Positions 33,579 through 59,406 of a DNA stretch of 64,000 nt are shown piece by piece. The DNA lies in the NCBI RefSeq assembly GCF_037042905.1, contig NC_087252.1, positions 6,510,001 through 6,574,000 of the forward strand. Direction: 5' to 3'. Positions within the stretch are counted from its first letter, which is position 1, and the number at the start of each line of letters is the position of its first letter. Under the pieces are notes generated by a model. It was given only the letters and a program-made list of their open reading frames with translations. It made no database searches and was not told the DNA's origin. This DNA comes from Lytechinus pictus (Eukaryota). A program made the translations under genes and the position numbers.

Positions 33579-36500
33579 TCATCCTATCATAAGACCAAAA
33601 CCAAATCTACATTGATTTTTCCACTGGTTGATGACACCACTCAAGATAAAAGAGAACGGCATTGGTTGAAGTCTCTTCTCTAATACTGCTGCTACTGTCC
33701 AATTTGTGTCTACCATGCCTGAAAGGGAGAGAAAGTAAAAAATATATATTTCAATAATCAAGTTAACATCATGGGAAAGAATCTCGATGAAATCATTTCA
33801 AACCATGATTTGCCCAATATGCAAGTCTCTTCTCTTTTAAACTCTGCTGCTAACGTCCAATTTGTGTCTACCATGCCTGAAAGAGAAAGTAGAAAATAGA
33901 TATTTCAAAAATCAAGTTAACATCATGGGACAGAAAATATATATCATTAACAACCACAATGACATCATTTTAAAGCATGATTTGCCCAATATGTAAGTCT
34001 CTTCTCTAGCACCGCTGCTACCGTCGAATTTGTGTCTACGGTACCATGCCTGCATGGGACAGAAAGTGAATGAGATGAAATGCTGTCAAATATCCATGAT
34101 ATGAGCAGATCATTAAATGAAGAATGAAAGAAAATAGATGTAAATAAAATTAGGGAATGTCTTTTACATCACTCTTTCATTGTACCTGCCTATGAATGAA
34201 ATTATGAAAATTAATAATCTTTTAGACGTAATAAAACTTAATGCAGGCTTTGAATGACTTACCTTTGGATTCAATATTAAAACACTACTTGATAAAATCC
34301 TAATAAACCATTCCCTATTGGTAACTGGAATAAGCTGGTTTGTGCACAAAGCCTATTGGAATTACAGAATCTAGAACCTAACTCCTTCCTACCTTTGAAT
34401 ACAACATTTAAAACACTATTTGTTACAGTCCAAATGAACCATTGCATACTGGAATCGGCTGGTTTGTGTACAAAGCCTATGGAAATTACACAATTCAGTA
34501 GGCAACTGATTAATAAACCACTATAGCTTTGTACAACATTTCACTTTGTAACAACTCCAATTATATTGGGAAGCCATTGCCTTTGAATGTTTTTATACAT
34601 ATATGACGCTATAAANNNNNNNNNNNNNNNNNNNNNNNNNNNNNNNNNNNNNNNNNNNNNNNNNNNNNNNNNNNNNNNNNNNNNNNNNNNNNNNNNNNNN
34701 NNNNNNNNNNNNNNNNNNNNNNNNNNNNNNNNNNNNNNNNNNNNNNNNNNNNNNNNNNNNNNNNNNNNNNNNNNNNNNNNNNNNNNNNNNNNNNNNNNNN
34801 NNNNNNNNNNNNNNNNNNNNNNNNNNNNNNNNNNNNNNNNNNNNNNNNNNNNNNNNNNNNNNNNNNNGGTATCGGTTGGTCCTATGGTTATTNNNNNNNN
34901 NNNNNNNNNNNNNNNNNNNNNNNNNNNNNNNNNNNNNNNNNNNNNNNNNNNNNNNNNNNNNNNNNNNNNNNNNNNNNNNNNNNNNNNNNNNNNNNNNNNN
35001 NNNNNNNNNNNNNNNNNNNNNNNNNNNNNNNNNNNNNNNNNNNNNNNNNNNNNNNNNNNNNNNNNNNNNNNNNNNNNNNNNNNNNNNNNNNNNNNNNACC
35101 TTTGATAATAAACAAGTGGAACGCCTCTGGCAGTCTCGCCTGCATCACGCAATTTAATATAGCAGCAGTGCTAACTTTGAAAACTACTATAAAATAATCA
35201 TTCACAAAAACATCATTCATATAATGACATAATACCACGTTCATTGACCATAAATTACATTTGAACGGAGACTTAAGACTGTCAACTACACCCATGTCCA
35301 CATTTCATTCACTCTATCCATAAACTTTCAAAGTTATGATGGCACTTCAACAATTACCCCAACATGGCCTAAGTTTATTGACCTTAACTGACCTTTGACT
35401 TGGTTTTGTGACCTGAAACTCACAGGGGATGTTCAGTGATGCTTGATTACTCTTATATCCCAAGTTTTATGAACTAGATCCATAAACTTTCAGAGTTAGG
35501 ATGGTAATTCAACAAATACCCCCAACACGGCCAAAGTTAATTGACCTTTAATGACCTTTGACCATGGTCATGTGACCTGAAACTCGTACAGGATGTTCAG
35601 TGATACTTGATTACTCTTATGTCCAAGTTTTATGAACTAGATCCATAAACTTTCAGAGTTAGGATGGTAATTTAACATATACCCTCAACACAGCCAAAGT
35701 TCATTGACCTTAAATGACCATTGACCATGGTCATGTGACATGTAACTCGCACAGGATATTCAGTGGTACTTGATTAACCTAATGTCCAAGTTTCATGAAC
35801 TAAATCCATAAATTTTCAAAGTTATGATGGTAATTCAACAAATACCCCCAACTTGGCCAAAGTTCATTGACCCTAAATGACCTTTGACCTTGGTCATGTG
35901 ACCTGAAACTCAGGCAGGATGTTCACTAATACTTGATTAACCTTATGTTAAAGTTTCATGGACTAGATCCATAAATTTTCAAAGTTATGATAGTAATTAA
36001 AAAAATACCCCCAACCTGACCAAAGTTCATTGACCCTAAATGACCTTTGACCTTGGTCATGTGACCTGAAACTCAGGCAGGATGTTCACTAATACTTGAT
36101 TAACCTTATGCCCAAGTTTCATGAACTAGGTCTATATACTTTCTAAGTTATGATGTCATTTCAAAAACTTAACCTTAGGTTAAGATTTGATGTTGACGCC
36201 GCCGCCGTCGGAAAAGCGGCGCCTATAGTCTCGCTCTACTATGCAGGCGAGACAAAAAATCAGTATCAATACTACAAGGGCACCGAGTGGGTGTCCGGCC
36301 CGTTTTAACGGTAGGCCTAGGGGCTCTTTGCATTTTCAGCATGTAAGAGTAGCGCATTTCCCTACACTTTTTAAAGCAAATATACCCTCATAATCTACCT
36401 TTATGTAATTACATATCATTTTTCAATTAAAAGAAGGTCTTTAAATATCACTTTTGTGACAAAAAAACACCCAGTTTCATGCAGGTGTGATTTGTTTTCA

Positions 36501-39500
36501 TTTAAATCTATGAATTTTTCTTGTTCACCAGAGCTCTCAAAAACTATAATTTTGAATATATTTTTGAGAGCCCTCTATTGGTGGAAAGTGAGATTGATGC
36601 AGATCTTCATCTCCGCAGATTCTCTTTTTAATTAGAAAAAATTAATTTCAATAATTCAATTGAGTTATGGGCCAAGGCATAGGCCTATTTTTATGATGAA
36701 TTTAGATCTAAGTTGGGCCTAACTTACTGTATGAAAAACTGACGTGCCAAAAAATCAAACATTTATCCAGCCTATATCAAGAGAAAATAAGCCAAACATT
36801 GACAATCATATTCATGTTATTTCACCGCACAGGGGTTACTGACTGAGGACAAAACCTAAATTGGATAAGTGCTTGTTGGTATAAGAGAGCAGATTTTCAG
36901 CCATGACAAAAACGGAGCTGAAACTAAACGGCTGCATGCGCCCGACCCGCACTGCGCACTTGCGGTGCGCCGGTGAGCTAAGACGGGGAAGCTGAGGCGC
37001 AGCAACTCGGCAGGCGCTGGGAGCTTAGGCAAGCGAAGCAAGTAGATTTGGCGTTCGGCTCCGAAGACTCAACTTGAGATCAAAATTTGATAATCTCCTT
37101 TCTTCCTCAAAAATTTGACAACTATTCAAAAAATAAAGTACAGATCAATGTTAAAATTGCGTTGGGATAGATCTAACTTAGAGTAGCGTCGGTGCGCGAC
37201 GGCCGGGCGGCGCGGGGTATGGTGTGCAGCCGTTCGGCAGCTGCAGCATGCAGGCAGCGCAGAAGCTCAGCAATATACCACTGAAATCACCAAACACACT
37301 AGACATACATGTACACTGCACATTCACTAACTCACTCCAACACTACAAAATCTTCCGGCGACATGGGCAAAACCTCAAATAAAAGGTGAAATTTTCTTAC
37401 CTAAATCACCATATTTCGCGTCAAAAATATCACCACCAGTAATTTTTAACATCGTAGTTAGGAAACAAGGGGTCTAAAAAAATGTATTTTTCACGGTTTT
37501 TCCGATGTTCGTGGATTATGAAAACATGTCCTCACTAAAAACTGGCACTTTCGGGAGCCGATGTCAGCCGCCATTTTTTTCCGGAAGTCAACGCTAAGTG
37601 CGGCCGTAGCGTGTACGCTCGTTATTTTCACATGCATTTGCAATGGAACTGCGCACTTAGCAGTGTTTGCGCGCCGTTTAACGTCGCTCTCTGTGCAAAA
37701 CTAGCGCATTTGCGTAGCCGTGCGCTTCAGTCGCATCTTGATATGAGCCATGCATGCGTTAGTCGCATCATACAGCCGTTTCAATAATTTCAACACTATA
37801 TTGATTAACCCAAAAATCTGAATTTTGTTTTTAAAATTCGGAATACGGAATGGAGGTATAAAAATCGGTATAATTCCGCCAAAATCGGAATGGTTGGCAG
37901 GTATGTCACCACCATCATCATCACCATCATCATCATCATCACAATCATCACCATCACCATCATCATCACCATCATCATCATCATCATCAATAATCATTAC
38001 ATGTACCTACTGGTATCAGGTGGTCCATGCACAGTCTATGGGAATCTAAGGATCCAGAAGTCAACCGGTTAACCTTACCTTTGAATACAACGTTTGCAGC
38101 TGGTAGATCAACCTGGTACCCTAGTGAGACCGATGACTCTCTCCCTCTTAAATTACTCTCAAATTCTACACCAATCTGAACTTCTTTTCCTTTGTGATAG
38201 TAAGCTGCGTGGAATGCGGTTGGTCCTACAGTACTGGAAGCAATCCAATTATCAGCTGAATAATAAAGAGACAAAATGTTAATTTGGGCTACCCGCTATG
38301 TACACCATATTTGATCAATATACTAGATCACCAAACAGTTGTCAAATAGGACAGGTCAAATGTAAAAAAAAAAGAGTCATATCTGCTGTGAGCACTGTAC
38401 AGACAAGCATAAGCTGAACGCATAATTTATTAATCGACCAGGGAAAACTTTTATCTTGCTGAAGTTTTTTGTATTTTTGCTTTTACTTTTCACTATTACT
38501 GTTTTCTCATGCCAACAAAGAGGTTGGGTTTGATAGCCGTAGAAATATTTTTCAAGGGTGTCACTTTGATGATATTTCCATACATGTGAGCTATGCAAAG
38601 CTAAATGCTACCAATTCTCTAACGAAAGTGTAGTCATATAATGTAGTAAATGGTGGTGGTTAATAAAGGCTACTGCCAACTGGCTGTTTTAATGACTTAA
38701 ATCTCATTTCAAAATTCATGTTTGCATTTATACACATACATGCATTTCAAAAAATTTCAGTCGGAATGTATGGGAGCACCTTGCTTGCTGAAAAAAGCAA
38801 CAACTGATAATCAAATACTTACTTGCATATTTGCCTGCTAGTGAGACTACAGTAGCTTGTTGGCCCTGCCCACAATGATAGAGAAGCTCCGCCCCCAAGG
38901 CCAATCTCTTAGTTATACTCTGCATATAATGAAGTACAGCTATACCCGATCCTTCTAATGGATCGACGTTAGCCATGGTTAGTGTTCCGGTGTAGGACGG
39001 GCCTTTGTATTCCAGCTCAGCTTGGTATACACCCCATTTGGTTTGCTGTGTCTGTTGGAGTGATTAGAAAAACATGACAAAAATAAAAATCCTCTCTAAA
39101 ATTGCTTCTGCTTCTAAAGCCAATTAATTGAATTACAGATATGATGGTACCTGTCAAGTTGATGATATGGTTAAAGAAAAATGCACAAATTATTTGTTTT
39201 TTACATTATGCCAAAAAAATAGTATAAAGTATAAAGACACTTCTCCTACACTTTCGTTATCTTTTCACACTTCCTGCCCCCTGTCCACTCGCAACCCCCA
39301 ATACCCCCCTTCCCCAAAGGGGATCATCATGCTTTTTAGTTTCTTCCTTTCACTGGATTGCATTTTTTTCTTTCCTGCTATATTATTTCTTTTTTCTTTT
39401 TCTAAAGTCTTATTTTTTAACACATACAGTAAAGAGTAATATTAACCTTTACACTTTATTTCAATTTATCGTTCAAATTAAAAGTTGAAACAGAGTTGCA

Positions 39501-45075: not shown

Positions 45076-45679
45076 CAGATTTGGGAAGTAAGTCAGTCGA
45101 TGACATACTTCCATTAATTAACGGGGAGATAAACAGTATTTATCGTAATGTTTCACATGAACACACGTAATTAAAATACGCACACATAAGCATTTCAGTT
45201 CATCGATTTTAATCTATAGATGCAACATGTGTTAATATATGGCAACATTAAAATGTATACCCCTTAATTATTTCAGAGTTGTAAGAAGTGCCGGGAAAAA
45301 AGAAGAAGAAAAGGATGAAGACGAGGAAGAGGAAGGAGGAAGAGGGTCGAAGAGGAGGAGGAAGCGGAAGATTTAGGAATTGAAAATTAGATTTTAAGAT
45401 CAGTTTAACACATTTTCGGCTAATTTGGAACAAGCCATTGTGTAATTCCCCAGTCCGGGCCTTGAAAATTTTAAATTTAATTGCTCACGTAGTTTATAGA
45501 CCGTCATTTCTATTGTGCCACACTTGGTTGGCAGTAGCTAAAAGGCCCAATGAACTCTAATTCATTTTAACAGAGTGCGAGGTTGTGATTTTGAAACTCA
45601 TTTAAACCCTACATTTTCAGAAGAGTGAAATCAAATTCATCGATGACTAAAGTTTCACTTTCGAATATCATCAATCCTT

Positions 45680-48600
45680 TTACGCGGTGACACGGTCAAT
45701 AATTTGCTTCATGAAGTCCATTTGCGGAGCCAGGTTACACGCTGTATCGGAAAATATAATAAAACAAGATGGATGGATTCATGCAATACAGTTATGAATA
45801 AAAAATGATATTCATACTGACATTTCAATACAAATTAAAATATTTGAAATGGTTAATGTGAATATTGGTTCATTAGTTATATTGTGTCTGTCATAGTTTT
45901 ATTTGGAGGAAATGTACCCTTTTTTCAATAAAATTTCCCACAACAAAAGCAAAACAAAGCAAAATAATAACATGGGGGCCTACAAAACATCGATTGATGA
46001 TGGTCGTCAAGTATAAGTTTTGGTTCACATTGACTCGTCATACTATGAAATTCTGCAACGAGTGACGAAGCCCAGTCTGTTGATAATATTCGTTCAGGGG
46101 GGGGGGGGGTGTAGTGTAGGCCCCACTATATGACTGTTGTTTTTGTTTTGTTGCTGTTGTTGTTTGTTACCCCATATCTTCAACATGGATCACACCTTCT
46201 CTGCAATAAAATAATTCACAACAAATTATTTCAACATCAGATCGGTAATAATGTATGTTTTGTTTCTGTTCACGCAGCGAGTGCGGAACCGGGCGGGGTG
46301 CGCAGCCCCCAATTTTTTACTAAACCGTTTGTACAAATACGTGAAAACTATACCATCAAATTGTATTTTTATACATGTTCAGCCACGAAATAACTAGTTC
46401 TTACCGTATGAGATTGAAGCGTATCCCCACCTGTGTTTGAGATATAAGGATAAATGGCTTAGGTTTTGAATATATTTTTTTTACGATTTGATTTTTTTTT
46501 TGTATTGGGCCAACATTTAACGGAATAGATCAAATCAAAGGCGGAAGGGTAGAGGGTGTATGGTTAAAGAGTCATAGTACAAAGGGTTTTTTTTAATAGA
46601 AAGGGCATAAACTCTGAAATCTATATTCTCAAGTTTATAATTATATTTACATTAAATCCTTCTCTTTATGATACTCTAACTTCTTCTTCTCCTTCTGCTT
46701 CTTCTTCTTCTTCCAGAGTAAGTGCTGCTTCAAGGCGATGAAGATAAACGCACTTGTTGTGAGTGTATGTGTGGAACTTTTCACATTCTATTATTGCCAA
46801 ACATATATCTTGGTAAGCTGTGGTCACATCCCGTCGTACTTGCACGTGCGCGCAGTCTACGTGCGAAAACGTGGGCAAAAATCGGGAAATTCGTACGTCA
46901 CGCACGTGGTGAGTACCGACTCGGTACGGATTTGGCAGTGCGCAGACACGACGCAGAACTTTTAGTGCAGGAGGAACTTTCGCTGCGTGCAGGCTACGTT
47001 CGAGCTACGGATTTGCCCCACGTGCGCGCACGCACACCCTCGGTACTGCCAAAGTACGCACAACGCACCGACTCCGTGAGACTTTTTAGATATTCGCCGC
47101 GGCCACCTCCTGTACCGAAGGTGCACTTAGCAAGTGCGCGTTGCCGCACGGATAATTGCGTGACCCGCGCTTACTCGGCACTTTCCCAATGTAATTATTC
47201 AAATGAACGTGAAGAACTCACGTGCACTTGCGGAGTAAGCATGTGATCAGCACTCACAACGCACGTTGTGCTCAAATATAAACAAGAAAACACAAAGTCA
47301 TATTCTATTACCATGTTCCACATAATGACCTTATTCTTATTTATTCACACACTATATAATACATGAATTTCATGAACTATGTCTAAAGTTTATTATCATG
47401 AGTGCTTGAAGAGGTTGTAGAATGTAAAAAAATGAAATAGAATCGTGTATCATGAGTTCAAACAAAGACAGTGGGAAACTGTATTAGTCCGCCAAAAAAA
47501 AAAAAAAAAAAGAATAAAAGTAAAATGATTTGTCATAGATTTCTATGAAATGAAATAATGCTTATTACGAGTTCCTGCGTTCACACAACGAGATCCTGCC
47601 ATGGATATATAGTCAATATCATACTGACTATATATCAATGGTGTAGATACTTTCAATGTTTCAGGAGTCGCCGCGCCTTGGAACCTGGCCTGAAACTCGC
47701 CATCACTCTTCGCTTTTTGGCAACGGGAAGCAAGTCCCTTGCGTATGACTTCCGGATGGCACACAATATGTGTAATCACACGTAAAGACAATTCCTTCTT
47801 TTTTCTAAAAGGAAAGGCAATCCCCCTCCCCATAATGGAGAATATAAGTTGTAATTGGCATTATAATTGGAGTTAGTTTTGCCCAAACCTTTCTAATAGT
47901 ACATGGACCTTTTCTATTCAAGAAGGATTGCTTCAAAACTGTCAATATTCTTTATTACAAAATTAAGGAGTTAGAAATAGCGAATGAAATAATTGTTTAT
48001 AACACGTCAAGTAATATTTGCCGTCCAAGTTATCGATGTTTATAAAGGTGCCACGTCTTGCTCATGCCCTGCCACTTGAAGCTGCTCTGCCAGTATCAAA
48101 AGTATTTGGAGTCTCTGTGGTAGAAGAGGCGGCATTTTGAAGGACGTCAGAAGATCAATCTCTATAAATATACCCCACCACATAGGGGGGGGGGGGCTTA
48201 CGTTCATCGCAAGTGCATGCAGTTGCAAGCTGCGCGTAAGTAAGGACGGCGTACGTGAGCAGCACGTGTAAGTACGGCCTCCATTCCAAAATGTGTCGAA
48301 CGCACGGAGATCGTACGTTGTAAGCAGGTACAACTCACTCCACACGTGCGCGGCGTACAATGCACGCAATCGCTCACTGCAAGGCGTGACACGCGGGCAG
48401 CGCACGCACTACGTACTAACACCTTGCGTAGTCGTACGAGTGACGTGCGTCGACGCACTTGCTCCCTGCGTTCGCCACTTTTCCCTACGTTTTCAGAAAA
48501 ACGCAGCGACCGTAGCCTCCCCCAAAAAACGTACGGCCAAAAAAAACGTACGGCGGCTTGTGACCAGGGCTAGATGAATGAATAGAAGCTATAGCTGATA

Positions 48601-50982
48601 ATTTATGTCCGAATATTAACCGGGAAACAAAATCATACACATTAATCATGATAACAAAGATCTTACCAGTCCCAACATGCATTGGGGTTTCCGCCCATCT
48701 GTTTTGCAATGGTTTGTGGGTAGATAATGATGATATCATTAAGGTCAGCCACTTCGTTATAGCCAGAATATCTGATGTAAGCGTCATTGATTGCATCACT
48801 GTCAAGATAAAAGAAAATCTTGGTGCACTGACAATTCCGGGTGAGAGGGTGGGGAGGGGGGGGGGGGGTTAATCCCCTGTCCTTTGCACAAGTTGAAATT
48901 GTGATGAAGTTGTAATAGGAACTTTTCTTCTCCCCCCCCCCCCACCATCCGCAGACCTAGCCCTATGGGGCTTTATTCTTCCCTATATGTTTTCTAAAAG
49001 TTGTATTTTACGTGAATGGTCCCTTTTCCACTGAGAGCCTCATAATCAGCGAACTTCTACTAATATCTGGCATTCTCTATATACTTTACACAGCAAATAT
49101 AATTAAACGGCATGCACTGGATACGATTGGTTAAAAGTTCCCATATGTAATAACACAGACACCGAATATATTACAAATTTTACTATAGCTGGTATAAAGT
49201 GCACCATCGTCTATAAGGTCCACCCGATTGTGTTTAAGCACATATGACCCACGTTGAGTATTTACGCTCGTCACGCTCTGTATTTTTCAAAATAAAGCTT
49301 TATCATATGTAAAATGCATGGGTAGTGTATTCGGAGCAAATAATCATTATTCAATAATTGATAAACAGGCATACGGGTCTATAGACAAAGGAAATGCAGT
49401 ATAACTTGATCCGGTGACGATCAAATATGGAATGGTATTATAGATCTTATCACTTACTACTGCATTAAACAACCATGGAGGGCTATGTGTATCCTACAAT
49501 CTGAAAGGAAAAAAATAACGATAATAATGAATATCGCTCTGTCGTACAGAGGGGGCCTTGGTGGTAATGGACTCCCAACGATTTTCACGACCAAGGAAAA
49601 AAATTTGAAAAAAAAGAAACAAACGAAATTGATGCAGAAATAAAGAATGAGAGCAAGTTGAACAAAAACTTAAAAAGCGGATGAACATGACCTCATATAA
49701 TTTGAACTTTTGACCCATAGATGACCTTTGATGCCATCATTTTCATGGGGTCACATGTGGTATTATCCAAGGATCAGATATATCAAGTATGAACATAAAT
49801 GATTAAAAAATCAAGAAATGAGAGCAAGTTGAACAAAAACTTTAACATTTTCGAACAGACCAACAGACCGACGGATATGACGGACCAATAGCATGAATAG
49901 ACTAAGAGACTAGCAGACCAACGGGAAAAGTGATTACTAAGTTTCTGCTGAGCTTCGTTTAGGCGAGACAAAAAAGAGAGGAAAAAGGATGAAATGTGTT
50001 TCTATCTCTTTAATATTTTGTCAAAATTTACCACACTCTGTTTTTACGAAGTGAAATACACTGTTTTGTGCCTGAAAATGTATCAAAATTTAATGAATGC
50101 CAATGGAACTTCGAGTACGAACATAATAATGGCGTGAAGAGCCAAATATGTTGAGGGGGTGAGGAATGGCGTGACGTGGACCAAAGTTTTCCATTAAGAC
50201 AAATTTTGGCATTTTTTTTATTTCCCTTTCCTTTTCTTTCTTTTCTCCTCTTTTTAGTCGTGAAACTTCTGGTGTTCTATGCGCCTCAACCACCACGCAT
50301 CTTTACGCCAGGGCCCCGTTGCATGAAAAATTACCATTATGGTAACTTTGCTATCCAATAATGGTAACTTCCCTGAAATCTTTGATTCTGATTGGCTGTG
50401 GATCATCGTTACCATTGTAGTTACTATTGGATGGCAATAATGGTAACTTTTATGCAACTTTTAGGCAATTATGCGATGAAAGAATGCAAATGTTAAGGCG
50501 TAAATTAAAGTACACCCACTGCTCTAAAACTGCTCGAAAATATACTTCCAACAAAAACACAGCGATTTTGAAAACAATGTTAGTTATATCATAAACGATT
50601 ATATGTATATTTGCGAAGCGAACTTAAAAAAATGCATTGTAATCAATTAATAGCAAGAACAGAATAAATGCAAATGTTCAAATGCCGTCAAAACAAGGCA
50701 AAATAGAAATTGTTAATGACGTCCAGACGAAACGATATCAAATATTTGGCATACAAAATGATAGATTAATCATAGTCTGAACGCAAGGGTAAAATGCTTA
50801 CTAGATGCGTCGCCAAGGCAACCAGGTGGTACATAAACAAAGCCAGTATCAGCCACACTCTCCTTTGCTGCGTTTTCGTTTTTGAAAAACTCAGTTTGGT
50901 CGAATTCGAACATCTGTAATCGAGGATTGTGAATATTTTTAAATCAGTTTTTGTCGCAAAAGCTGTTGTAAATGTATAACTT

Positions 50983-51023
<41 letters not shown>

Positions 51024-51309
51024 TTATAAAGTAATCACAAAAGGTTTAGTAAATGCCGTGGAAATAAAATCGTGGAAATAAAATCTGTTTCTGAAACAGT
51101 CGTGAAAAACACGTCTGTTTTCACGACTGTTAGAAACGGATTCTGAATTCTCTTTTTTTTGTCACATCATGGGCACTGACGAAGAGTGTGACTTTACCTT
51201 TCATTTTTGAGAGCTATGCTCCTTTTAAAATCTACGATTTTATTTCCACGGCATTTACTAAACCTTTTGTGATTACTTTATTCCATATGCCGAAGCAGAC
51301 TATTTCTAA

Positions 51310-51371
<62 letters not shown>

Positions 51372-54300
51372 CTTGATATTGCTGAGAGAAAAGTTAATTT
51401 TATTCCCGACCAATCCAGCTCCCACCTCCCCTTAACACTCTAAATTTACCCCCTCTGATATATATATATACACACATACACAGTGGTTGACAAAAGTAAA
51501 AATACAAAATTATGAACTTCATATAGAAACTGCACAGAAATCAGATTGGCTAAACTTTTGAGACACTCAAATAAGAAAGATGATCAAAATTAATCAAGAA
51601 AATAAATTTTTCTCTCATTGTTAAGCACGTGCCGGTTCACTTTGAATTACCTGTAGTTGAAACCTGGACTGAATGGCCCTTTATTTAGACCCGCGATGTA
51701 TATATTGAAGATGACAAAATACTCAGGCAAAATACTTACCTGCCCATTTTGACCAGTGCTCTCTGTCGGGGTCTAGATATATAAAACGGAAAATGAAAAA
51801 TGGTGTGATTAACAGGGCAGGGAAAACAATTCAGATTGTTTTCTCTACCCCCTGTTTAAGTTCCAGTCCAGGTTTGATTAAGATTTTAACACAAATATTG
51901 TATTATTTTCATTATCATTTTTACCATAAAAACAGAACAGATGTCGACTTTATGTTGATCGAATAAAAACACAAATATAAGTTTTGAGCAAGACAAATCA
52001 TGATCTTTATTCATGCAGGGGCGTCAATAGAAGGGGTATGAGGTGTGACCCCCCCCCCCATCCAACTCAGCTGAGGTAATCAAATACAATGGGTTCATGC
52101 ACATGCAATTGTAATCCAACCATAGTAATGATGATAATTGTTATTATAAGGCGACCTATGGTTATTATCATTACTGTCATCATCATCATCATCATCATCA
52201 TCATTATCATCATCACCCCATCATCTCTCATCATCATTACCACCATATCATCATNNNNNNNNNNNNNNNNNNNNNNNNNNNNNNNNNNNNNNNNNNNNNN
52301 NNNNNNNNNNNNNNNNNNNNNNNNNNNNNNNNNNNNNNNNNNNNNNNNNNNNNNNNNNNNNNNNNNNNNNNNNNNNNNNNNNNNNNNNNNNNNNNNNNNN
52401 NNNNNNNNNNNNNNNNNNNNNTATTCCCATTCAATGAGTCAGTAAAATAATAATACCTCAAGTCCTGGTCCATTGTAATGATAATAATTGTTATTATTAG
52501 TCGACCTATGGTTATTATCATTACTGCCATCATCATCATCATCATCATCATCTCTCATCATCATCACCCCACCACCACATCATCACCATCATCATCATCA
52601 TTATCATCATCAACACCCCATCATCTCTCATCATCATTACCACCACCACATCATCACCCCATCATCTCTCATCATCATTACCACCACCTCCACATCATCA
52701 TNNNNNNNNNNNNNNNNNNNNNNNNNNNNNNNNNNNNNNNNNNNNNNNNNNNNNNNNNNNNNNNNNNNNNNNNNNNNNNNNNNNNNNNNNNNNNNNNNNN
52801 NNNNNNNNNNNNNNNNNNNNNNNNNNNNNNNNNNNNNNTTCTCATTCAATGAGTCCGTTAAATAATAATACATCAAGTCCTGGTCCTATATAGTAATGAT
52901 AATAATTGTTATTATTAGGCGACCTATGGTTATTATTATTACTGTCATCATAATCATTATCGTCATCATCACCATCACCCCATCATCTCTCATCANNNNN
53001 NNNNNNNNNNNNNNNNNNNNNNNNNNNNNNNNNNNNNNNNNNNNNNNNNNNNNNNNNNNNNNNNNNNNNNNNNNNNNNNNNNNNNNNNNNNNNNNNNNNN
53101 NNNNNNNNNNNNNNNNNNNNNNNNAATCATCATCTTCATCACCATCTTCATCATCATCATCATCATCATCATGTTTGCGATAATTATTCCCATTCAATGA
53201 GTCGGTAAAATGATAATACCTCAAGTCCTGGTCCATAGAAATGATTCAGCATCTCAAAAGCAGCGTTATATCCACAGTTGTTGATATACGGTTCACCCAT
53301 ATAACCACACGGATTACCGTGCTTATCATGAACCTGTAATAGTAAATACAAAAAAATGTCGAGAAGGAATTAAAGTGATTGGTTAACATTGGTTTGACTT
53401 TTAAAAAATCTGAGCTAGAAGGTCGCACTTGTCACCTGAGTCTGTGATATGTTACAAAAATGAAGCCCAGAAAAAATTGCGTTCGAAAATAATTATTTAG
53501 TGCTTCAAAAATTGAAATATAAAGTGACCGAAAACACCATCTTAATTTCATCCTATACACTTATGTGTACTATTTAGGCGTCTATAAGACGCCTATTTAC
53601 AAAATCGGGGTTTGCCTTGTAGTTTTAGCTTTTCATTCTCAATAATGGTTGTTTTCTGGGTTTATTAGTTCTAACACATGCACTTGTACACATGTTTCAT
53701 CTTGGTTTGAGAATTTTTTAAATCGGCTGCTCACAAAGTTAAACAATACCTTTAATGACCTTTGTTTGTTTATCATGTATGTATTATTCTTTGTTTATCA
53801 TGTATGTATTATTGTATATATTATGAATTGTAAATGAAAACAAGAGTGGAAAAAATAAATTCAAATCAAAATAAATTCAAACATTCTTTCTTAAATTACC
53901 CATGCAGATTAAAGAGCATGACCCTTATATGGCATTGTTTAGATGGATATAAAGTACGTACATATAGGAACGAAAAGTCCGAGCAAAAAATTCAAACAAA
54001 TAGAAAGATCCTTATATTACCTTTGTTTAAACATGTTAAACAGATAAAAAGTATCAACAAACATTATTAAAACACTAAACTCAATTAAAATAAAAATTTA
54101 CTGACTCAAAATCCTCATATCGGCCTATCAGGAATAATGCAAGAAATGAAAAGGCAAAATAAAAACATCAATCAATACAGCAAAAAAAAATATCGAATGC
54201 TGAATCATGATTTATTTCTTCATATAGATTTGAAACAGCTAATTTATGATACAGATATTAAAAATCAATCAAATCTTACCATAGAATGTTCAGCAGGAAT

Positions 54301-57300
54301 CGTGTATTCGGTGAGGTAATTGTTGTCATCATAATTGAAATGGCGATAGTATTCCTCTGCAGCCTTGGCAACATCTATTAAACAAAATTATTAACTTATC
54401 AATATTAGAGTCAGGGGTGGTGCCACTACTGGGGGGGGGGGGTAGAGGTGACTGCCCCGTGATTAACCACGTAGTGAAGACGAAGAAAAAATTGTGAGAA
54501 AAGGCATGAAAGAGAAAAGGAATAGTGTAAAACAGAGAGGTCTGGCCGGTATATTAATACTACATACCCTATTATTCAATCGAAAAATTATCCCTCCAAA
54601 AATACCACGATATGCCCCCCCCTCCCCCCCCCCCATCAGAGTATAAACGTGGAATAAAGAAAAGATTATCCGATAATTTCGCAGCAGTGGCGGTTATGAG
54701 ACAAAATTAATTTATTCAAAATAGATTTATGGAATTAAGAATAGAACACAGCAGTATAAAAAACAGTCCAGTGGAACAATAGTTTTCGTCAGATATCAAT
54801 GGATGTTCAATTGGTAGGGATGATATAATCCTACAACTCGGCATAATATAGAATTGCATGTTTAGGGTCGTTTTCGGAAAATGAACCCCCCCCCAAAAAA
54901 AAAAAAAAAAAAAAAAACGAATGTTAATTATATTTCTTAATGCATTTTCAATATAATCGTGCATTTTTTAAAATAGACTTTATAAATAAAGAGAACGTAA
55001 TTCGTGAAACACACTTTGGTTGACTACGCCATCCCTTGTTCCACCGAAGACGTATATTTTATCGTTGATCATGTTGACTGGGTCATCAATTGTTCTCGTG
55101 CTGAGAGCGTATGAAGTTGGAAATCCAGCCAAGTAGTCTACATTAATGTCCCCGGTCTCCATACATTCACCTAGAGCTTTAAATAGATTAGCCTGAGCAC
55201 ACCAGTAAGGACCTGCGGAGAGTGAGGACACACAAATCACGAACTTACAAACTAAATAATCCATGGCTCTGTGAAGCGGTATGCTGCCTACTGTATATGT
55301 GTTATGGTAGCACGGTACCTCCTGAAAAATTAGGTTATGCTAAAAAGTAGAAGTTTTACCAAAATAACCTTAATTTTTTAAACTTTTTTTGTTGTTGGGG
55401 GGGGGGGGGCTTGTATTTTTTTGTCCAATCAGCACCCCCTCTTCACAAATCGTTCATAGGATCCTGCTCTCAGAACAGATATTGAAAGTAGAAAAAAAAG
55501 TAGGTACCTTTGCACAAATCGAATTTCGAAAACAAAGAAATCTGTCAGACATAGGGGAAAAATCGAGGTAGCTAATATAATGATATTATTTAACAATAAA
55601 AATTTTGCATGGTCCGGTAAAAACAAACCCCGACTTAACATAAAATATTCGACCAATATCAAGTTATGCATTGTTGTAGACGGATTCCCAACTGCATGCA
55701 TCGTGCAGTCGAATTTTTTTGCACACATAGGCCTAACTTATACCCCTTTCATAAACCCATCCTCCAATTAGCCGCCTAAGAGTAATGCGGATAATTCAAT
55801 AAAAATTGTGTTCACAAACTCCAAAAATAATCCGCACTATTTTTACGAGCGCCCGTCCTGAAAAAGGTGGATAATCGTCATGACAACTGCACACGCCCCC
55901 TTATCCGCATTATTTGAAAATGCGTTCATAAAGTCAAAATCTGGTCCCGATGCCGCTATTATGCGGATAATTGCAGCATCAACATACTGCGGATAACTCT
56001 GGTCCTCCTCCGATTTTACGACCAAATTATGCTGCTATTAGCCGCATAATTGGGTTTATGAAAGGGGTATTAAATTTTAGAAAGCGTCTTCAATTACAAA
56101 TATTGATAATCAAAAGGACGATTTTAAATATCACCTGTTACAATAATCATAATGAAGTGTATGTGACAAAAATAACTAATACTGACTTGTCGGCAAAAAA
56201 ATCACATTCTACCAATTAAACAGCAAAAATGTGATGTTAACCGGTGTACACAGAGGACCACACCAATTATTTTACACCGGTGTTAAACTGACAGTGTTAG
56301 TTTAACACTTATAGGTGTTATTACAACACCTTTGGTTGTTATATTTACACTCTTTGGTGTTGTGATCAATCTCTAGGGTGTAATTTTAACACCTCAGGGT
56401 TTGGTCCTCTGTTAACACCAACTGGTGTCAGTTTTATCACCACAGTTTTTACAGTGTACGTGCCATAGAATTCCCTTGATAGGCAGTGCACTTTAACTAA
56501 AGACTTGCCTTATACAGTGACCACACCCATATACTTACCTCCTGCGACCACGCCCACTCCCATGATGGAGGCGGAGTAAGCGACATGCACCTGTACGGCC
56601 ATGAAAGCTCCAGAAGATATTCCACTCACTGTAACCTGATCATTGTTTGCACCATAATGCTCTGTTTAATAAGATAATAATAATATACGAGTAGGTAAGG
56701 ACAGTTTCCATCCATTTGAGCAGTGGTGTTTTATGGTTCCATATGACACTTGGTCCGGCGACAATTGCTCCGATGGAAAATCTGCGCAATAAGCCAAACA
56801 TGAACCCTAACCTCCAAAACTAAATAAACCATACTCCTTCAATTATCTTTACATTATTCTGTACCAAACACTCTAGAAGTGAATTAAAACAAAATCTTAA
56901 GATGTGCAATAATGATGCTCATCTTTTTTTCAATAAAGGAAATCATGATCGCGTAATGTAGAATCATTTGTTATATCATAGTACTATTATATTCTTATTC
57001 TCTGATAAATCCATATTCATAAGAATTTGAAATTAAATGTTATGTTTAATATGCGTCAATTAGGTCGTCGACCTTTTTATCAATTATTTTATCCATATCG
57101 TTTAACTAGTTGTTTGAACAACTATCAAATATTGCTATTCCATCTGTTGGATTTCACACGGGAAAGACCTTATATATAACCTTTCTGTATCTTTATTCAA
57201 ACAAAGTAAGATGAGCCCCTTGAATTCTGGAAGGCGAGCTGGGTAAAAGTGCTCCTTGTGAGAAACTATGTGTCCAACCAACATTGGGCATTTCTTTTGG

Positions 57301-59406
57301 GCATTTTTATATATCCAGTGTCATGAAAATTTTGCCCATTCTAAAGCAATTGCTTCTTATTTTTAAACTTACTGGACAATATGCTTCCCGCATTGGGTAT
57401 AATACTGCCCCAAATTGGTTGGACACATAGTTACCCTCTAATTTCCCCAATATTTTGTTTACAGTGTGTTTATTGGGAAAAAGAATGTATATAAAAAGAT
57501 GAGGATAAGAAAGACAAATTTTTAAAGGCCAATTGGTTAGGTGAAAATCAAGGGGGGGGGGGGAAGGGGAGAGGCATGACCCTGGGAAGGTGAAGCCGAG
57601 GATGCTCGCACCCCCAAGATTTGTAGAAGGCGTTGCGTATTATACACCATAGGCAGCACCCCCTGGATGAAAACCATGTTGGTATGCTAAAAAGTAGAAA
57701 TTTAATCCAAATCACCTTTCTGGAGCGATTTTTTGCTTGTCATTTTTGGGGGACCAAAATTACCTTCGTTTGTAAAGAAAATCTTTTTTTTAACCAGAAT
57801 CCCGCCTCTTAAAAAAATGTTAACAGGGCCCTGGAGGGAGGGACCGAGAGAGGGAAAAGGGAGGGAGAGGGGAGGGGAAGAGGAGGGGTGGATTAAGATG
57901 GAACAAGGAGCGATTGTATATGAACACAAAATTATTCAACCTGATTTACAACTTATGGATTTTAAGGTTTTCTCCAATATCAATCTGTTTTAGTGTACAC
58001 TCTTAAACTTATGGGCGACATACTGTCCACACAACAATATTATTGGTTAAAAAATCCAACTCCGGGTATTTTTCAATTAATATAGTTTCACCCAAAGCAC
58101 ACATTATTGGTTTAAAACTACCCAGAATTTGATAAAATTTTAACCAATTGTTGTGTGGCCAGTATCTTGCCCAACATTTTTAAGAGTGTATACATTGGAT
58201 TGTTAAGTTTCAAATGTAATATAAATTGTCTGTTTGTCCTAATGAATTTGAGATGGGAAAACCGTATGTAATATAGGATTAATTTGGACATAATAACATG
58301 ATGGGTCTTATAAAAAGCTGATGAACTTGTGGGGTAGCCCCTCTGGTAACATGAATAAAGAGAATATCACAATATAGAAGACAGATTTTTTGTTATTTAT
58401 TAAAAAAAGGATTTAGTGATGGATGACTAAAAAAGAATATACTGACGAAAGGAAAAAGGTTGGGAAAGAGCAAAAAGGAATAAAATCGAGAGTCGGAAAA
58501 TCATAGAGAAAGATGATGGTGTGGTTATGTTTATCATATTCCAAAAAATATAAAGCAAACAACATGCAACATTATACTGGGGGAAAATCACGATGGTAAA
58601 ACACGAGGTTACACACGGGAGGGTCCCATGCACCGTAATGATTCGAGATAATAACACCAAATAATATCGATATATCAACACCAATGTGTTACTGTACATG
58701 CTGTAGGGATATTATTAAACTAGCCCCAAAGGGAGTATAATAACATTAACCAAACACCCCTGGTGTAAAATATGCTAGAAGACAGAATGGTGTGATTTAA
58801 AAATGCTGTTGTTTTGCAGTGTATAGGCCTACACAAAAGACAGTCTTAGGTGTTTAATAACATGTGTGCTTGAACAACGCCTTGTTGCCAAGGGAGGGGG
58901 AGGGGCGAACGACCCTGTGTCAGGGGCCGCGGAAGCGGAAGCGGGGGGGGGGGGGGGGGGCTGGGGAGCTTCAGCCCCCCACTTTTTTCCGAAACCGTGT
59001 ACAAAAACGTAAAAATGACCATAGGATTGTGATTTATTGCATGGTCAGCCCCCCCCCCACTTGTGGCTCAGCCCCCCCCCCCCACTTTGAAAACCGTTCC
59101 GCGGCCCCTGTTTGTTATTTCAATAAGTGAAATAAAAGAGGAGAAAAGGGACCAGAGTGAGAAAAGGGGAAGCGAGAAGGGAGAAGGAAAAAAAAGGAGT
59201 CACTGAGCTGAAACTCTATAATACTAATACTTTTAAATTCAATGCCAAAATGACGTCCCTTTTATTCCTCTAACAAAAACCCACTGCCGCCCCTGACATA
59301 ATTATAAAGAAGAAACAATTTATCACATACCTAGGGGAGGAGCGGCCGCCTGGCTTGTTGCAAACAAGATCGTTACAAGGAGAAGGTGAAGAAATTCGTG
59401 CGACAT
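45680..59406 (-). CDS. Secreted poly(3-hydroxybutyrate)/PHA depolymerase, fungal PhaZ-like type-II catalytic domain (11 exons, 337 aa)
   Basis: Exons 59406-59331, 56661-56539, 55212-55015, 54374-54280, 53333-53220, 51772-51740, 50913-50802, 49500-49458, 48798-48667, 46430-46405, 45741-45680. Total 1014 nt, all GT-AG, phases consistent. Protein: MSHEFLHLLLVTILFATSQAAAPPLEHYGANNDQVTVSGISSGAFMAVQVHVAYSASIMGVGVVAGGPYWCAQANLFKALGECMETGDINVDYLAGFPTSYALSTRTIDDPVNMINDKIYVFGGTRDGVVNQNVAKAAEEYYRHFNYDDNNYLTEYTIPAEHSMVHDKHGNPCGYMGEPYINNCGYNAAFEMLNHFYGPGLETPTESTGQNGQMFEFDQTEFFKNENAAKESVADTGFVYVPPGCLGDASNCRIHIALHGCLMQYDAINDAYIRYSGYNEVADLNDIIIIYPQTIAKQMGGNPNACWDWWGYASISYACNLAPQMDFMKQIIDRVTA. Confidence 0.93.
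46817..48570. mobile_element. PIF/Harbinger transposon, internally deleted, in depolymerase intron 9
   Basis: Imperfect TIR GCTGTGGTCACATCCCGTCGTAC / GTACGGCGGCTTGTGACCAGGGC; flanks TAA/TAG; CpG-rich subterminal regions; transposase remnant inside. Confidence 0.8.
47660..47770 (+). pseudogene. Harbinger (HARBI1-like) transposase fragment
   Basis: FRSRRALEPGLKLAITLRFLATGSKSLAYDFRMAHN matches the KLAITLRFLATG.S..SL...FR HTH region, with an apparent small deletion. Confidence 0.8.
51026..51281. repeat. Inverted repeat element between (CA)n/(TA)n microsatellites
   Basis: ATAAAGTAATCACAAAAGGTTTAGTAAATGCCGTGGAAATAAAATCGT and its exact reverse complement; (TA)n at 51311-51366. Confidence 0.85.
52120..53236. 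repeat. Complex (CAT)n-containing tandem repeat (~350-410-bp units, at least 3) with assembly gaps; unit includes the depolymerase exon 5 donor
   Basis: Repeated TAATGAT.ATAATTGTTATTA..GCGACCTATGGTTATTAT and CATTCAATGAGTC.GT.AAAT.ATAATAC.TCAAGTCCTGGTCC; N runs at 52255-52421, 52702-52838 and 52996-53124. Confidence 0.9.
53370..53755. mobile_element. TTAA-flanked MITE; related fragment at ~22437-22640
   Basis: TTAA|AGTGATTGGTTAAC..GTTAAACAATACCT|TTAA; shares ATATGTTACAAAAATGAAGCCCAG with the 22437 fragment. Confidence 0.78.
55741..56070. mobile_element. MITE
   Basis: TACCCCTTTCATAAACCCA / TGGGTTTATGAAAGGGGTA, with internal TGCGGATAA repeats. Confidence 0.8.
57998..58188. mobile_element. TA-flanked MITE (Tc1/mariner-type)
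   Basis: TA|CACTCTTAAA ... TTTAAGAGTG|TA. Confidence 0.7.
58921..59110. mobile_element. GC-rich MITE (2196 family) in depolymerase intron 1
   Basis: CAGGGGCCGCGGAA / TTCCGCGGCCCCTG with shared interior. Confidence 0.85.

What the first reader, a model, noticed from the sequence alone, without database searches (positions are those of the whole stretch)
45680..59406. Intron-rich animal gene for a secreted PHB (bioplastic) depolymerase with an intact catalytic apparatus
Seen: 11 GT-AG exons splice in phase into a 337-aa ORF with an N-terminal hydrophobic signal peptide (MSHEFLHLLLVTILFATSQA). Knowledge: the motif order VTVSGISSG...VAYS...AGGPY.C, IYVFGGTRD..V, AEH, PYINNC.Y, DTGFVYVP..C, C..HIALHGC, GYN..AD.N.III.YPQ, NPN.CWDW.G is collinear with Penicillium funiculosum extracellular PHB depolymerase as I recall it. 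That enzyme is a circularly permuted alpha/beta hydrolase with a type-II catalytic domain and an N-terminal lipase box. Predicted triad is Ser41-Asp127-His162, oxyanion residues Ser42/Cys261, substrate Trp309. PHA degradation is classically a bacterial/fungal trait; I recall animal homologs being reported only recently (e.g. in a gutless marine oligochaete), which needs verifying. Ten host-style introns full of host TEs, and the position next to TOMM40, argue strongly against contamination. Inference: a digestive or defensive enzyme that lets a grazing marine invertebrate harvest carbon from bacterial PHB granules in biofilm, sediment or gut symbionts, and potentially degrade PHA bioplastics.
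Basis: partly seen in the sequence, partly recalled or inferred. Interest (0 to 1): 0.95.

Follow-up and report, generated by a model that had tools for sequence, protein, structure and literature searches.

The report
Sea urchin PHB depolymerase gene
This is a real, expressed, 11-exon sea-urchin (Lytechinus pictus) gene for a secreted-type enzyme that most likely breaks down the bacterial storage polyester PHB.

Summary
Eleven GT-AG exons on the minus strand (59406 to 45680) splice in phase into 1014 nt, giving 337 aa. That protein is 100% identical to the RefSeq protein 'poly(3-hydroxybutyrate) depolymerase-like [Lytechinus pictus]'.

The three N gaps all lie inside intron 5. Spliced cDNA-type contigs from public runs bridge that intron exactly, so nothing coding is hidden there.

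The protein passes the curated NCBIfam model for type-2 extracellular short-chain PHA depolymerases (347 bits, cut-off 280). It matches the Penicillium funiculosum enzyme by sequence (PDB 2D80, E 1e-40) and by predicted fold (TM 0.82/0.87). It keeps Ser41/Asp127/His162, Ser42/Cys261 and Trp309. TOMM40 is indeed the neighbouring gene, and intron 4 holds a repeat with more than 1,500 candidate copies in this genome.

All 10 intron positions and phases are shared with another urchin and a hemichordate. Most are shared with a mollusc, a millipede and a tunicate. Every intron of a sponge homolog sits at an L. pictus intron position, and no intron of an amoebozoan homolog does. This points to vertical descent within animals, not recent transfer.

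It is not novel. Zeidler et al. 2026 (Nat Ecol Evol) described such enzymes in 66 animal species of nine phyla, echinoderms included, with enzyme assays. Activity of this urchin enzyme remains untested.

The parts
59331..59406 (-). Exon 1 (76 nt). Start codon at 59406. Encodes the hydrophobic N-terminus, a putative signal peptide of about 20-22 residues. Ends in phase 1.
   Evidence: The AF2 model shows residues 1-20 as a low-confidence helix outside the fold. The mature 2D80 chain starts aligning at about residue 23-27.
56539..56661 (-). Exon 2 (123 nt). Holds the lipase box G39-I-S41-S42-G43, that is the nucleophile Ser41 and the oxyanion residue Ser42.
   Evidence: An exon of the same 123-nt size occurs in six other animal species.
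55015..55212 (-). Exon 3 (198 nt). Holds the G-G-T-R-D127 motif with the catalytic Asp127.
   Evidence: Asp127 is invariant in the 45-sequence alignment.
54280..54374 (-). Exon 4 (95 nt). Holds the A-E-H162 motif with the catalytic His162.
   Evidence: His162 is invariant. The E4|E5 splice joint is seen in contigs of all four runs.
53220..53333 (-). Exon 5 (114 nt), with the P-Y-I-N-N-C motif. Its last 15 nt and the first 7 nt of the intron behind it are copied again inside the tandem repeat of intron 5.
51773..53219 (-). Intron 5. Contains all three assembly gaps (52255-52421, 52702-52838, 52996-53124), set in a tandem array with a period of about 400 bp, rich in ATG/ATC-type triplet microsatellite.
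   Evidence: Spliced contigs bridge it.
51740..51772 (-). Exon 6, a 33-nt micro-exon encoding 11 aa, phase 0 at both ends.
   Evidence: Found by enumerating AG..GT open frames in the intron. A 33-nt exon sits at the same position in S. purpuratus, Ptychodera and Patella. It is laid in contigs of the related species, and the exact 33-nt gap appears in the X13 contig.
50802..50913 (-). Exon 7 (112 nt), with the D-T-G-F-V-Y-V-P motif.
49458..49500 (-). Exon 8 (43 nt). Holds H-G-C261, the oxyanion-hole cysteine.
   Evidence: His259, Gly260 and Cys261 are invariant. The 43-nt gap appears in the X13 contig and there are joints in X7.
48667..48798 (-). Exon 9 (132 nt). Holds the Y-P-Q and N-P-N-x-C-W-D motifs, with the Trp309 codon split across the E9|E10 splice.
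46405..46430 (-). Exon 10 (26 nt). Completes Trp309 and encodes W-G-Y.
   Evidence: A 26-nt exon sits at the same place in S. purpuratus, Ptychodera, Ciona and the millipede.
45680..45741 (-). Exon 11, coding part (59 nt plus the TAA stop). The 3' UTR probably runs on to about 45200, where an ATTAAA signal lies at 45213.
   Evidence: The UTR length is inferred from the 1528-nt contig, which has 570 nt on the low-coordinate side of E9.
53400..53756 (.). Interspersed repeat of about 357 bp inside intron 4. It is a young host repeat and marks the locus as native urchin DNA.
   Evidence: At least 1,596 first-look candidates in the window's own genome. The 40 scored copies are 97-99% identical and lie on many contigs. 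Contig depth there is very high.

Best explanation
The region is the single-copy Lytechinus pictus gene for a eukaryotic polyhydroxyalkanoate depolymerase (PHAD), a one-domain, type-2 extracellular short-chain-length PHA depolymerase.

Shown here: the gene has 11 exons, is transcribed and is spliced as modelled. The product has the circularly permuted alpha/beta-hydrolase fold of the P. funiculosum enzyme, with the nucleophile Ser41 in an N-terminal G-x-S-x-G box, Asp127, His162, the oxyanion positions Ser42/Cys261 and Trp309. It has eight cysteines, seven shown to align with cysteines of the fungal enzyme. It has no separate substrate-binding domain. The intron-exon structure is shared across animal phyla.

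Inferred: the hydrophobic N-terminus is a cleaved signal peptide. The enzyme is delivered to the gut lumen or to a digestive (phago)lysosomal compartment. There it binds a single PHB chain in its surface crevice and hydrolyses the ester bonds by the Ser-His-Asp mechanism to 3-hydroxybutyrate monomers and oligomers. These feed the animal from bacteria eaten with biofilm, algae or detritus.
For: - Gene model: 100% identical to the RefSeq protein P0095.
- Transcription: spliced contigs with 0 mismatches cover E4-E9.
- Family: NCBIfam NF050059 at 347 bits against a cut-off of 280, E 9e-104, covering 26-335 of the protein and 2-305 of 305 model positions.
- Solved relative: PDB 2D80 at E 1.1e-40, with all catalytic positions aligned. 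The fungal residue numbers are confirmed in PMC5445757.
- Conservation: D127, H162, H259, G260 and C261 are invariant, and S41 and W309 nearly so, in 45 homologs.
- Fold: AF2 pLDDT 93.4 and pTM 0.91. Foldseek gives TM 0.82/0.87 to 2D81, and the next hit has E 0.02.
- Descent: intron positions and phases are conserved from sponge to urchin. The echinoid clade has 100/100 support and follows the species order.
- Native locus: TOMM40 is the neighbour and a host repeat sits in intron 4.
- Published activity: PHADs of an oligochaete, a sponge, an earthworm and a springtail degrade PHB and PHB/PHV in assays (PMC13642032).
Against: - No enzyme from any echinoderm has been assayed; activity here rests on homology. 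The protein is 40-50% identical to the other animal homologs scored here and, by Foldseek's structural alignment, 31-32% to the fungal enzyme.
- The paper reports that substrate-binding residues are only partly conserved among animal PHADs.
- Signal-peptide cleavage was not predicted with a dedicated tool.
- The tissue and stage of expression are unknown, because the runs are coded and their library type is not on record.
- Pfam's Esterase_PHB model stays below its cut-off (17.1 against 23 bits), as expected for a permuted domain.
Confidence: 0.85

Rival explanations
1. The protein has the PHAD fold but a different natural substrate. It might be another polyester, a lipid or plant-cell-wall ester (the profile of a cutinase, feruloyl esterase or general carboxylesterase), with PHB hydrolysis weak or absent.
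For: - Weak secondary matches to a feruloyl esterase (8IY8, E 9e-5) and to other alpha/beta hydrolases.
- The paper reports only partial conservation of substrate-binding residues among animal PHADs.
- No echinoderm enzyme has been assayed.
Against: - The score against the curated type-2 PHA depolymerase model is well above its cut-off.
- The only strong structural match is the PHB depolymerase itself, and every other hit has TM below 0.3.
- Four animal homologs from distant phyla, plus the oligochaete enzyme, all degraded PHB.
- In the paper's trees PHADs separate from cutinases and lipases.
Confidence: 0.1
2. The gene is a recent horizontal acquisition from a bacterium or fungus, or a contaminant in the assembly.
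For: PHA depolymerases are classically bacterial and fungal enzymes. Bacterial and metagenomic homologs score at 40-45% identity.
Against: - The gene has ten spliceosomal introns.
- A host repeat with at least 1,596 candidate copies lies in intron 4.
- The gene sits on a large contig beside TOMM40.
- Intron positions and phases are shared with a hemichordate, a mollusc, a millipede, a tunicate and a sponge, but not with an amoebozoan.
- The protein tree follows echinoid relationships, and the named animal sequences group together.
Confidence: 0.01
3. The locus is a decaying or misassembled copy. The gaps and the tandem repeat in intron 5 would disrupt the gene, or exon skipping as in the older 284-aa model would yield an inactive product.
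For: - Three gaps and a tandem array that re-copies the end of E5 together with its donor site.
- An earlier NCBI model, P0096, lacks E7 and E8, which include the oxyanion Cys261.
Against: - The frame is open for the full length, with all catalytic residues.
- A spliced contig with 0 mismatches contains E5, 33 nt, E7, 43 nt and E9 in the expected register.
- The exon sizes are identical to those of S. purpuratus.
- It is the only locus of this family found in the genome.
Confidence: 0.03

Closest known systems
RefSeq 'poly(3-hydroxybutyrate) depolymerase-like [Lytechinus pictus]'
   Same: It is identical to the 11-exon translation of this window over all 337 residues. It is this gene's own public annotation.
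   Different: Nothing differs. An older 284-aa NCBI model (P0096) of what is evidently the same gene, since only one locus was found, lacks exons 7-8 and differs at three residues: H27R, M176K and A188T.
Animal PHADs of Zeidler et al., Nat Ecol Evol 2026 (PMC13642032): Olavius algarvensis, Amphimedon queenslandica, Lumbricus rubellus, Folsomia candida
   Same: Same family (type-2 domain, nearest solved relative 2D81), about 330 aa, signal peptide, conserved triad and oxyanion hole, and many introns (10 exons in O. algarvensis). The paper's tree already includes Echinodermata, with an S. purpuratus icon.
   Different: Those enzymes were assayed; the L. pictus enzyme was not. I could not check whether L. 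pictus is in the paper's species table, because no supplementary files are held. In the main text introns come up only for the O. algarvensis gene, so the conservation of intron positions across phyla shown here appears not to be reported there.
Penicillium funiculosum extracellular PHB depolymerase (PDB 2D80 and 2D81)
   Same: Single-domain, circularly permuted alpha/beta hydrolase. The two proteins are collinear over residues 27-314 (E 1e-40), and the predicted fold has TM 0.82/0.87. The pairs Ser41/Ser39, Asp127/Asp121, His162/His155, Ser42/Ser40, Cys261/Cys250 and Trp309/Trp307 align, and seven of the eight cysteines are shown to align.
   Different: Sequence identity is only 31-32% by Foldseek's structural alignment. 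There are small loop differences, for instance a shorter loop before the N-P-N-x-C-W-D-W motif. The host is an animal rather than a fungus, and the gene has ten introns.
Bacterial extracellular PHB depolymerases (type-1 catalytic domain, e.g. the Ralstonia pickettii and Paucimonas lemoignei PhaZ enzymes; Pfam Esterase_PHB PF10503, TIGR01840)
   Same: Same superfamily and the same Ser-Asp-His chemistry. Partial matches are seen to PF10503, TIGR01840 and NF050058.
   Different: The segment order is permuted. The protein's C-terminal part (238-335) matches the start of those models, and its N-terminal part (26-139) matches their middle. Scores stay below their cut-offs. There is no linker (FN3 or Thr-rich) and no C-terminal substrate-binding domain.

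Membership tests
Extracellular scl-PHA depolymerase, catalytic domain type 2 (NCBIfam NF050059; P. funiculosum type) | Full-length match to the curated family model above its cut-off | tested here: met
   347.1 bits against a cut-off of 280, E 9.1e-104. Residues 26-335 match model positions 2-305 of 305.
Extracellular scl-PHA depolymerase, catalytic domain type 2 (NCBIfam NF050059; P. funiculosum type) | Lipase box G-x-S-x-G near the N-terminus, ahead of the oxyanion-hole segment (type-2 order, circular permutation relative to type 1) | tested here: met
   G39-I-S41-S-G43 lies in exon 2, and H-G-C261 lies far downstream. Type-1 models match in swapped order: 238-335 to the model start and 26-139 to the model middle.
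Extracellular scl-PHA depolymerase, catalytic domain type 2 (NCBIfam NF050059; P. funiculosum type) | Catalytic triad Ser-Asp-His at the positions of Ser39/Asp121/His155 of the fungal enzyme | tested here: met
   Ser41, Asp127 and His162 align to chain positions 19, 101 and 135 of 2D80, which are residues 39, 121 and 155. The residue numbers come from PMC5445757. D127 and H162 are invariant, and S41 is conserved in at least 90% of 45 homologs.
Extracellular scl-PHA depolymerase, catalytic domain type 2 (NCBIfam NF050059; P. funiculosum type) | Oxyanion-hole positions (Ser40 and Cys250 main-chain amides) and the crevice tryptophan (Trp307) | tested here: met
   Ser42, Cys261 and Trp309 align to them. 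Cys261 is invariant and Trp309 nearly so. The role of Trp307 rests on my recollection of Hisano et al. 2006 and was not re-read here.
Extracellular scl-PHA depolymerase, catalytic domain type 2 (NCBIfam NF050059; P. funiculosum type) | Three-dimensional fold of the solved member | tested here: met
   The AF2 model has pLDDT 93.4. Foldseek gives 2D81 with TM 0.82/0.87 and E 2e-28, and no other chain below E 0.02.
Extracellular scl-PHA depolymerase, catalytic domain type 2 (NCBIfam NF050059; P. funiculosum type) | Secretion through a cleavable signal peptide | tested here: inconclusive
   The N-terminus is hydrophobic with a small-residue S-Q-A-A-A stretch. It forms a low-confidence helix outside the fold, and the mature fungal chain starts aligning at residue 23-27. 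No signal-peptide predictor was available, and cleavage was not shown.
Extracellular scl-PHA depolymerase, catalytic domain type 2 (NCBIfam NF050059; P. funiculosum type) | Hydrolysis of PHB or PHBV to 3-hydroxybutyrate | not testable with these tools
   This needs a recombinant enzyme assay. It has been published for other animal members, but for no echinoderm.
Metazoan PHAD clade (Zeidler et al. 2026) | Groups with animal sequences, in an order that follows organismal relationships | tested here: met
   The echinoid clade has 100/100 support with the order (Diadema,(L. pictus,(S. purpuratus 1,2))). All named animal sequences fall in one clade with 94/87 support, apart from the named protists and the bacterium. 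That clade also holds three rows of unrecorded organism and a 7-row environmental group. Deep branches are unresolved.
Metazoan PHAD clade (Zeidler et al. 2026) | Shared ancestral intron-exon structure (my own added criterion) | tested here: met
   Of the 10 L. pictus introns, the number at the same alignment column and phase is 10 in S. purpuratus, 10 in Ptychodera, 9 in Patella, 9 in a millipede and 7 in Ciona. All 6 sponge introns coincide with L. pictus introns, and none of the 6 Pelomyxa introns do.
Bacterial multidomain extracellular PHB depolymerase (catalytic domain, linker and substrate-binding domain) | Linker (FN3 or Thr-rich) and C-terminal substrate-binding domain | tested here: not met
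   The catalytic-domain model accounts for residues 26-335 of 337. No FN3 or substrate-binding-domain match was found, whereas bacterial and metagenomic relatives carry PF00041 and PF18370.

The most novel reading that the evidence does not exclude
The most novel reading that my evidence leaves open concerns descent, not the enzyme. [quoted passage not shown] All 6 sponge introns and 7-10 introns in five other phyla sit at L. pictus positions, and none is shared with an amoebozoan. This gives independent, non-tree support for an inference that the 2026 paper could back only with a weakly supported node (43.8% bootstrap). It also makes the sea urchin, an experimentally tractable grazer with transparent feeding larvae, a convenient model for testing PHA digestion in vivo.
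Probability: 0.8. Interest if true: 0.35.

Novelty: already known. Interest (0 to 1): 0.22.

Why it matters
PHAs are a large microbial carbon store and a leading bioplastic. Animal enzymes that digest them change how we think about carbon flow from bacteria to grazers, and about the fate of PHA plastics in the sea. That point has now been made in the literature (Zeidler et al. 2026), and this gene is already named accordingly in RefSeq, so the finding confirms published work.

- an exact, transcript-checked gene model across three assembly gaps;
- evidence that L. pictus probably has a single copy, whereas S. purpuratus has two;
- an intron-position comparison that supports an ancient animal origin of the gene.

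A sea-urchin enzyme has still not been assayed, and L. pictus is a laboratory model in which that and knock-outs are feasible.

Tried and rejected
- Single exons searched alone gave nothing useful. Exon 3 against the PDB returned only chance Kelch-like hits. The six exons tried against Pfam returned nothing significant. One coordinate slip was corrected.
- My first model had 10 exons and was out of frame, because exon 10 was one base too long and the 33-nt exon 6 was missing. It was fixed by comparison with the S. purpuratus homolog and by enumerating AG..GT frames.
- I considered a candidate 'exon' at about 46200 (reading E-G-V-I-H-V-E-D-M-G) and rejected it. It cannot be joined in frame, and the homologs splice E10 directly to E11.
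- Pfam PF10503 does not reach its cut-off for this protein. I treat this as a consequence of the circular permutation, not as evidence against membership.
- A search of the whole genome for paralogs found only this locus. The tool's counts are lower bounds.
- No run is on record as RNA. The contigs are taken as cDNA because they skip the introns exactly, so the level and tissue of expression cannot be stated.
- The supplementary tables of the 2026 paper are not held, so I could not check whether L. pictus is listed there.
- DNA for the Rana temporaria homolog could not be fetched.
- The earlier-findings index had nothing near this place.
Full report
**Observation.** The region holds a minus-strand gene. 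I read the three minus-strand frames between 45000 and 60000 and inspected the splice sites. Eight exons were placed directly.

A HMMER search of 1.84 billion representative proteins with exon 3 alone (65 aa) returned a 337-aa homolog, P0002, in which the exon matched residues 68-131. Guided by P0002, a local tblastn placed the C-terminal exons and showed that 11 residues between exons 5 and 7 had no match. Enumerating AG..GT open frames in that intron gave one 33-nt candidate, 51772-51740, with a good acceptor and a gtaagt donor. Its peptide resembles the missing S. purpuratus segment.

The final model has 11 exons, all introns GT-AG, 1014 nt and 337 aa:
- E1 59406-59331
- E2 56661-56539
- E3 55212-55015
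- E4 54374-54280
- E5 53333-53220
- E6 51772-51740
- E7 50913-50802
- E8 49500-49458
- E9 48798-48667
- E10 46430-46405
- E11 45741-45680

It is 100% identical over its whole length to P0095, which NCBI names 'poly(3-hydroxybutyrate) depolymerase-like [Lytechinus pictus]'. The window is therefore L. pictus DNA.

**Assembly gaps.** The N runs at 52255-52421, 52702-52838 and 52996-53124 all lie within intron 5 (53219-51773). They are embedded in a tandem array with a period of about 400 bp, rich in ATG/ATC-type triplet repeats.

I laid Logan contigs of four public runs on 48600-54400.
- A 1528-nt contig of run X13 (organism A) matches E9, E7, E5 and E4 with no mismatch. Its own coordinates leave exactly 43 nt between E9 and E7 (the length of E8) and exactly 33 nt between E7 and E5 (the length of E6). 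E5 and E4 abut.
- The E4|E5 joint (skipping 946 nt, GT..AG on the minus strand) is present in all four runs.
- Contigs of a related organism B show explicit joints at 51769>53220, 50905>51744, 49498>50803 and 48785>49469.

These intron-free contigs can only come from cDNA. The gene is therefore transcribed and spliced as modelled, and the reading frame passes over the gaps by splicing. An older NCBI model (P0096) also contains the E5-E6 junction peptide. I did not fill any gap.

The 1528-nt length fits the full mRNA: 30 nt of 5' UTR, 1014 nt of coding sequence and about 480 nt of 3' UTR. An ATTAAA signal lies 467 nt after the stop. This last point is inference, because E1-E3 and E10-E11 were outside the stretch that was laid.

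**What the protein is.** P0095 passes the curated NCBIfam model NF050059, 'extracellular catalytic domain type 2 short-chain-length polyhydroxyalkanoate depolymerase'. The score is 347 bits (cut-off 280), E 9e-104, over residues 26-335 and model positions 2-305 of 305.

Against all PDB sequences, the only strong matches are 2D80 and 2D81, the P. funiculosum PHB depolymerase and its S39A mutant. The E-value is 1.1e-40, with residues 27-314 collinear with chain positions 5-292.

Counting along that alignment, and using chain index plus 20 for the published numbering:

| L. pictus | P. funiculosum |
|---|---|
| Ser41 | Ser39 |
| Asp127 | Asp121 |
| His162 | His155 |
| Ser42 | Ser40 |
| Cys261 | Cys250 |
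| Trp309 | Trp307 |

The triad and oxyanion residue numbers of the fungal enzyme were confirmed in PMC5445757. The role of Trp307 rests on my own recollection of Hisano et al. 2006.

In an alignment of 45 homologs, D127, H162, H259, G260 and C261 are invariant. S38, G39, S41, G43, C306, D308, W309 and W310 are at least 90% conserved.

The circular permutation is visible directly. Models of the type-1 family (PF10503, TIGR01840, NF050058, PDB 8DAJ) match the protein's C-terminal part with their N-terminal part, and the protein's N-terminal part with their middle.

An AlphaFold2 model built on the 45-sequence alignment has mean pLDDT 93.4 and pTM 0.91, and only the first 20 residues are of low confidence. 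Foldseek against the PDB returns 2D81 and 2D80 at TM 0.82/0.87 and E about 1e-28. Nothing else scores below E 0.02. The catalytic-domain model accounts for the whole protein, so there is no linker or separate substrate-binding domain, just as in the fungal enzyme.

**Native animal gene, inherited vertically.**
- *Neighbour.* Two Porin_3 exons lie at window 38068-38274 and 38830-39051 on the same strand. One of them matches human TOM40 (7CK6) at E 3e-20. TOMM40 is indeed the neighbour.
- *Host repeat.* Intron 4 holds a repeat of about 357 bp, with at least 1,596 first-look candidates in the window's own genome. The 40 scored copies are 97-99% identical and lie on many contigs.
- *Copy number.* Only this locus matches the protein in the 812-Mb assembly.
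- *Intron positions.* I fetched the genomic loci of homologs from S. purpuratus, Ptychodera flava, Patella vulgata, Ciona intestinalis, the sponge Halichondria panicea, a millipede and the amoebozoan Pelomyxa. I mapped each protein exactly onto its DNA with a spliced-mapping script and projected the intron positions onto alignment A1.

  | Species | L. pictus introns (of 10) at the same column and phase |
  |---|---|
  | S. purpuratus | 10 |
  | Ptychodera | 10 |
  | Patella | 9 |
  | millipede | 9 |
  | Ciona | 7, plus one shifted by one residue |

  All 6 sponge introns coincide with L. pictus introns. None of the 6 Pelomyxa introns does. Even the 33-, 43- and 26-nt micro-exons have identical sizes in several phyla.
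- *Tree.* A maximum-likelihood tree gives the echinoid clade 100/100 support, in the species order (Diadema,(L. pictus,(S. purpuratus 1,2))). All named animal sequences fall in one clade (94/87), apart from the named protists and a bacterium. That clade also holds three sequences of unrecorded organism and a group of seven environmental sequences. Deeper branches are unresolved.

Recent horizontal transfer and contamination are therefore excluded.

**Mechanism.** What is shown is the gene structure, the transcription, the family membership by curated model, the fold and the conserved catalytic positions.

What is inferred is the following. The N-terminal hydrophobic segment is probably a cleaved signal peptide. 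The protein probably reaches the gut lumen or a digestive vacuole. It probably hydrolyses PHB by the classical Ser-His-Asp mechanism, with the oxyanion stabilised by the main-chain amides of Ser42 and Cys261, yielding 3-hydroxybutyrate for the animal.

The activity inference is strengthened by published assays. PHADs of O. algarvensis, a sponge, an earthworm and a springtail all released hydroxybutyrate from PHB and PHB/PHV (PMC13642032). No echinoderm enzyme has been tested.

**Comparison with what is known, and novelty.** Zeidler et al. (Nat Ecol Evol 2026, PMC13642032) report 195 PHADs in 66 animal species of nine phyla, Echinodermata and Hemichordata included, with an S. purpuratus silhouette in their Figure 5. 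They report conserved triads, signal peptides in about 75% of the proteins, and an inferred presence in the metazoan ancestor. The database search here shows the same picture. 'Poly(3-hydroxybutyrate) depolymerase-like' proteins are already annotated in urchins, brittle stars, sea stars, sea cucumbers, crinoids, hemichordates, Ciona, molluscs, sponges and a frog.

But the finding is already known: the exact protein is in RefSeq under this name. The paper's main text does not appear to report that last point, and it supports a node that the paper's tree resolved only weakly (43.8% bootstrap).

**Verdict.** The gene is real, correctly modelled and correctly interpreted. It is not novel, and my interest score is low (0.22).

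Noticed in passing
window 52450-52471 and 52865-52886 (minus strand), against the true site at 53213-53234: The tandem array in intron 5 re-copies the last 15 nt of exon 5 together with the first 7 nt of the intron, GT donor included. One copy is perfect and the other has a single mismatch at the last exon base. Each of the three gaps sits in one repeat unit, so the number of units and the intron length are uncertain. The copies are potential decoy donor sites.
   Followed up: partly
window 53400-53756 (intron 4): An interspersed repeat of about 357 bp has at least 1,596 candidate copies in the genome, and the 40 scored copies are 97-99% identical. This looks like a very young SINE- or MITE-like family. 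Contigs of it have very high depth in all four runs that were laid.
   Followed up: partly
window 38068-38274 and 38830-39051, minus strand: These are exons of TOMM40 (Porin_3; human TOM40 7CK6 at E 3e-20), downstream of the depolymerase gene on the same strand. In S. purpuratus the paralog P0002 is instead followed by an EGF/zona-pellucida-domain gene (L008), so this neighbourhood is not shared by that copy.
   Followed up: partly
P0096 compared with P0095 (the protein of this locus): An older NCBI model of L. pictus (284 aa) skips exons 7 and 8, so it lacks the oxyanion Cys261. It differs at three residues (H27R, M176K, A188T). It is probably another haplotype or assembly with a gap or a model error, though real exon skipping is not excluded.
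   Followed up: partly
P0002 and P0094 (S. purpuratus) in the tree: S. purpuratus has two paralogs that are each other's sisters, which points to a lineage-specific duplication. Only one locus was found in L. pictus.
   Followed up: partly
tree: Seven unnamed JGI/Logan environmental sequences (P0103, P0110, P0114, P0118, P0120, P0122, P0132) form a 100/99 clade nested among the animal sequences. A millipede sequence pairs with one Ptychodera paralog (81/95). The source organisms of the first group, and the reason for the second pairing, are unknown.
   Followed up: no
L013 (Pelomyxa schiedti homolog): The amoebozoan gene has 6 short introns, and none is at an animal intron position. The animal intron set therefore looks specific to metazoans, or at least is not shared with this amoebozoan.
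   Followed up: yes
window 34616-34867 and 34893-35097: Two further assembly gaps lie outside the finding, about 3 kb below the TOMM40 exons located here (38068-39051).
   Followed up: no
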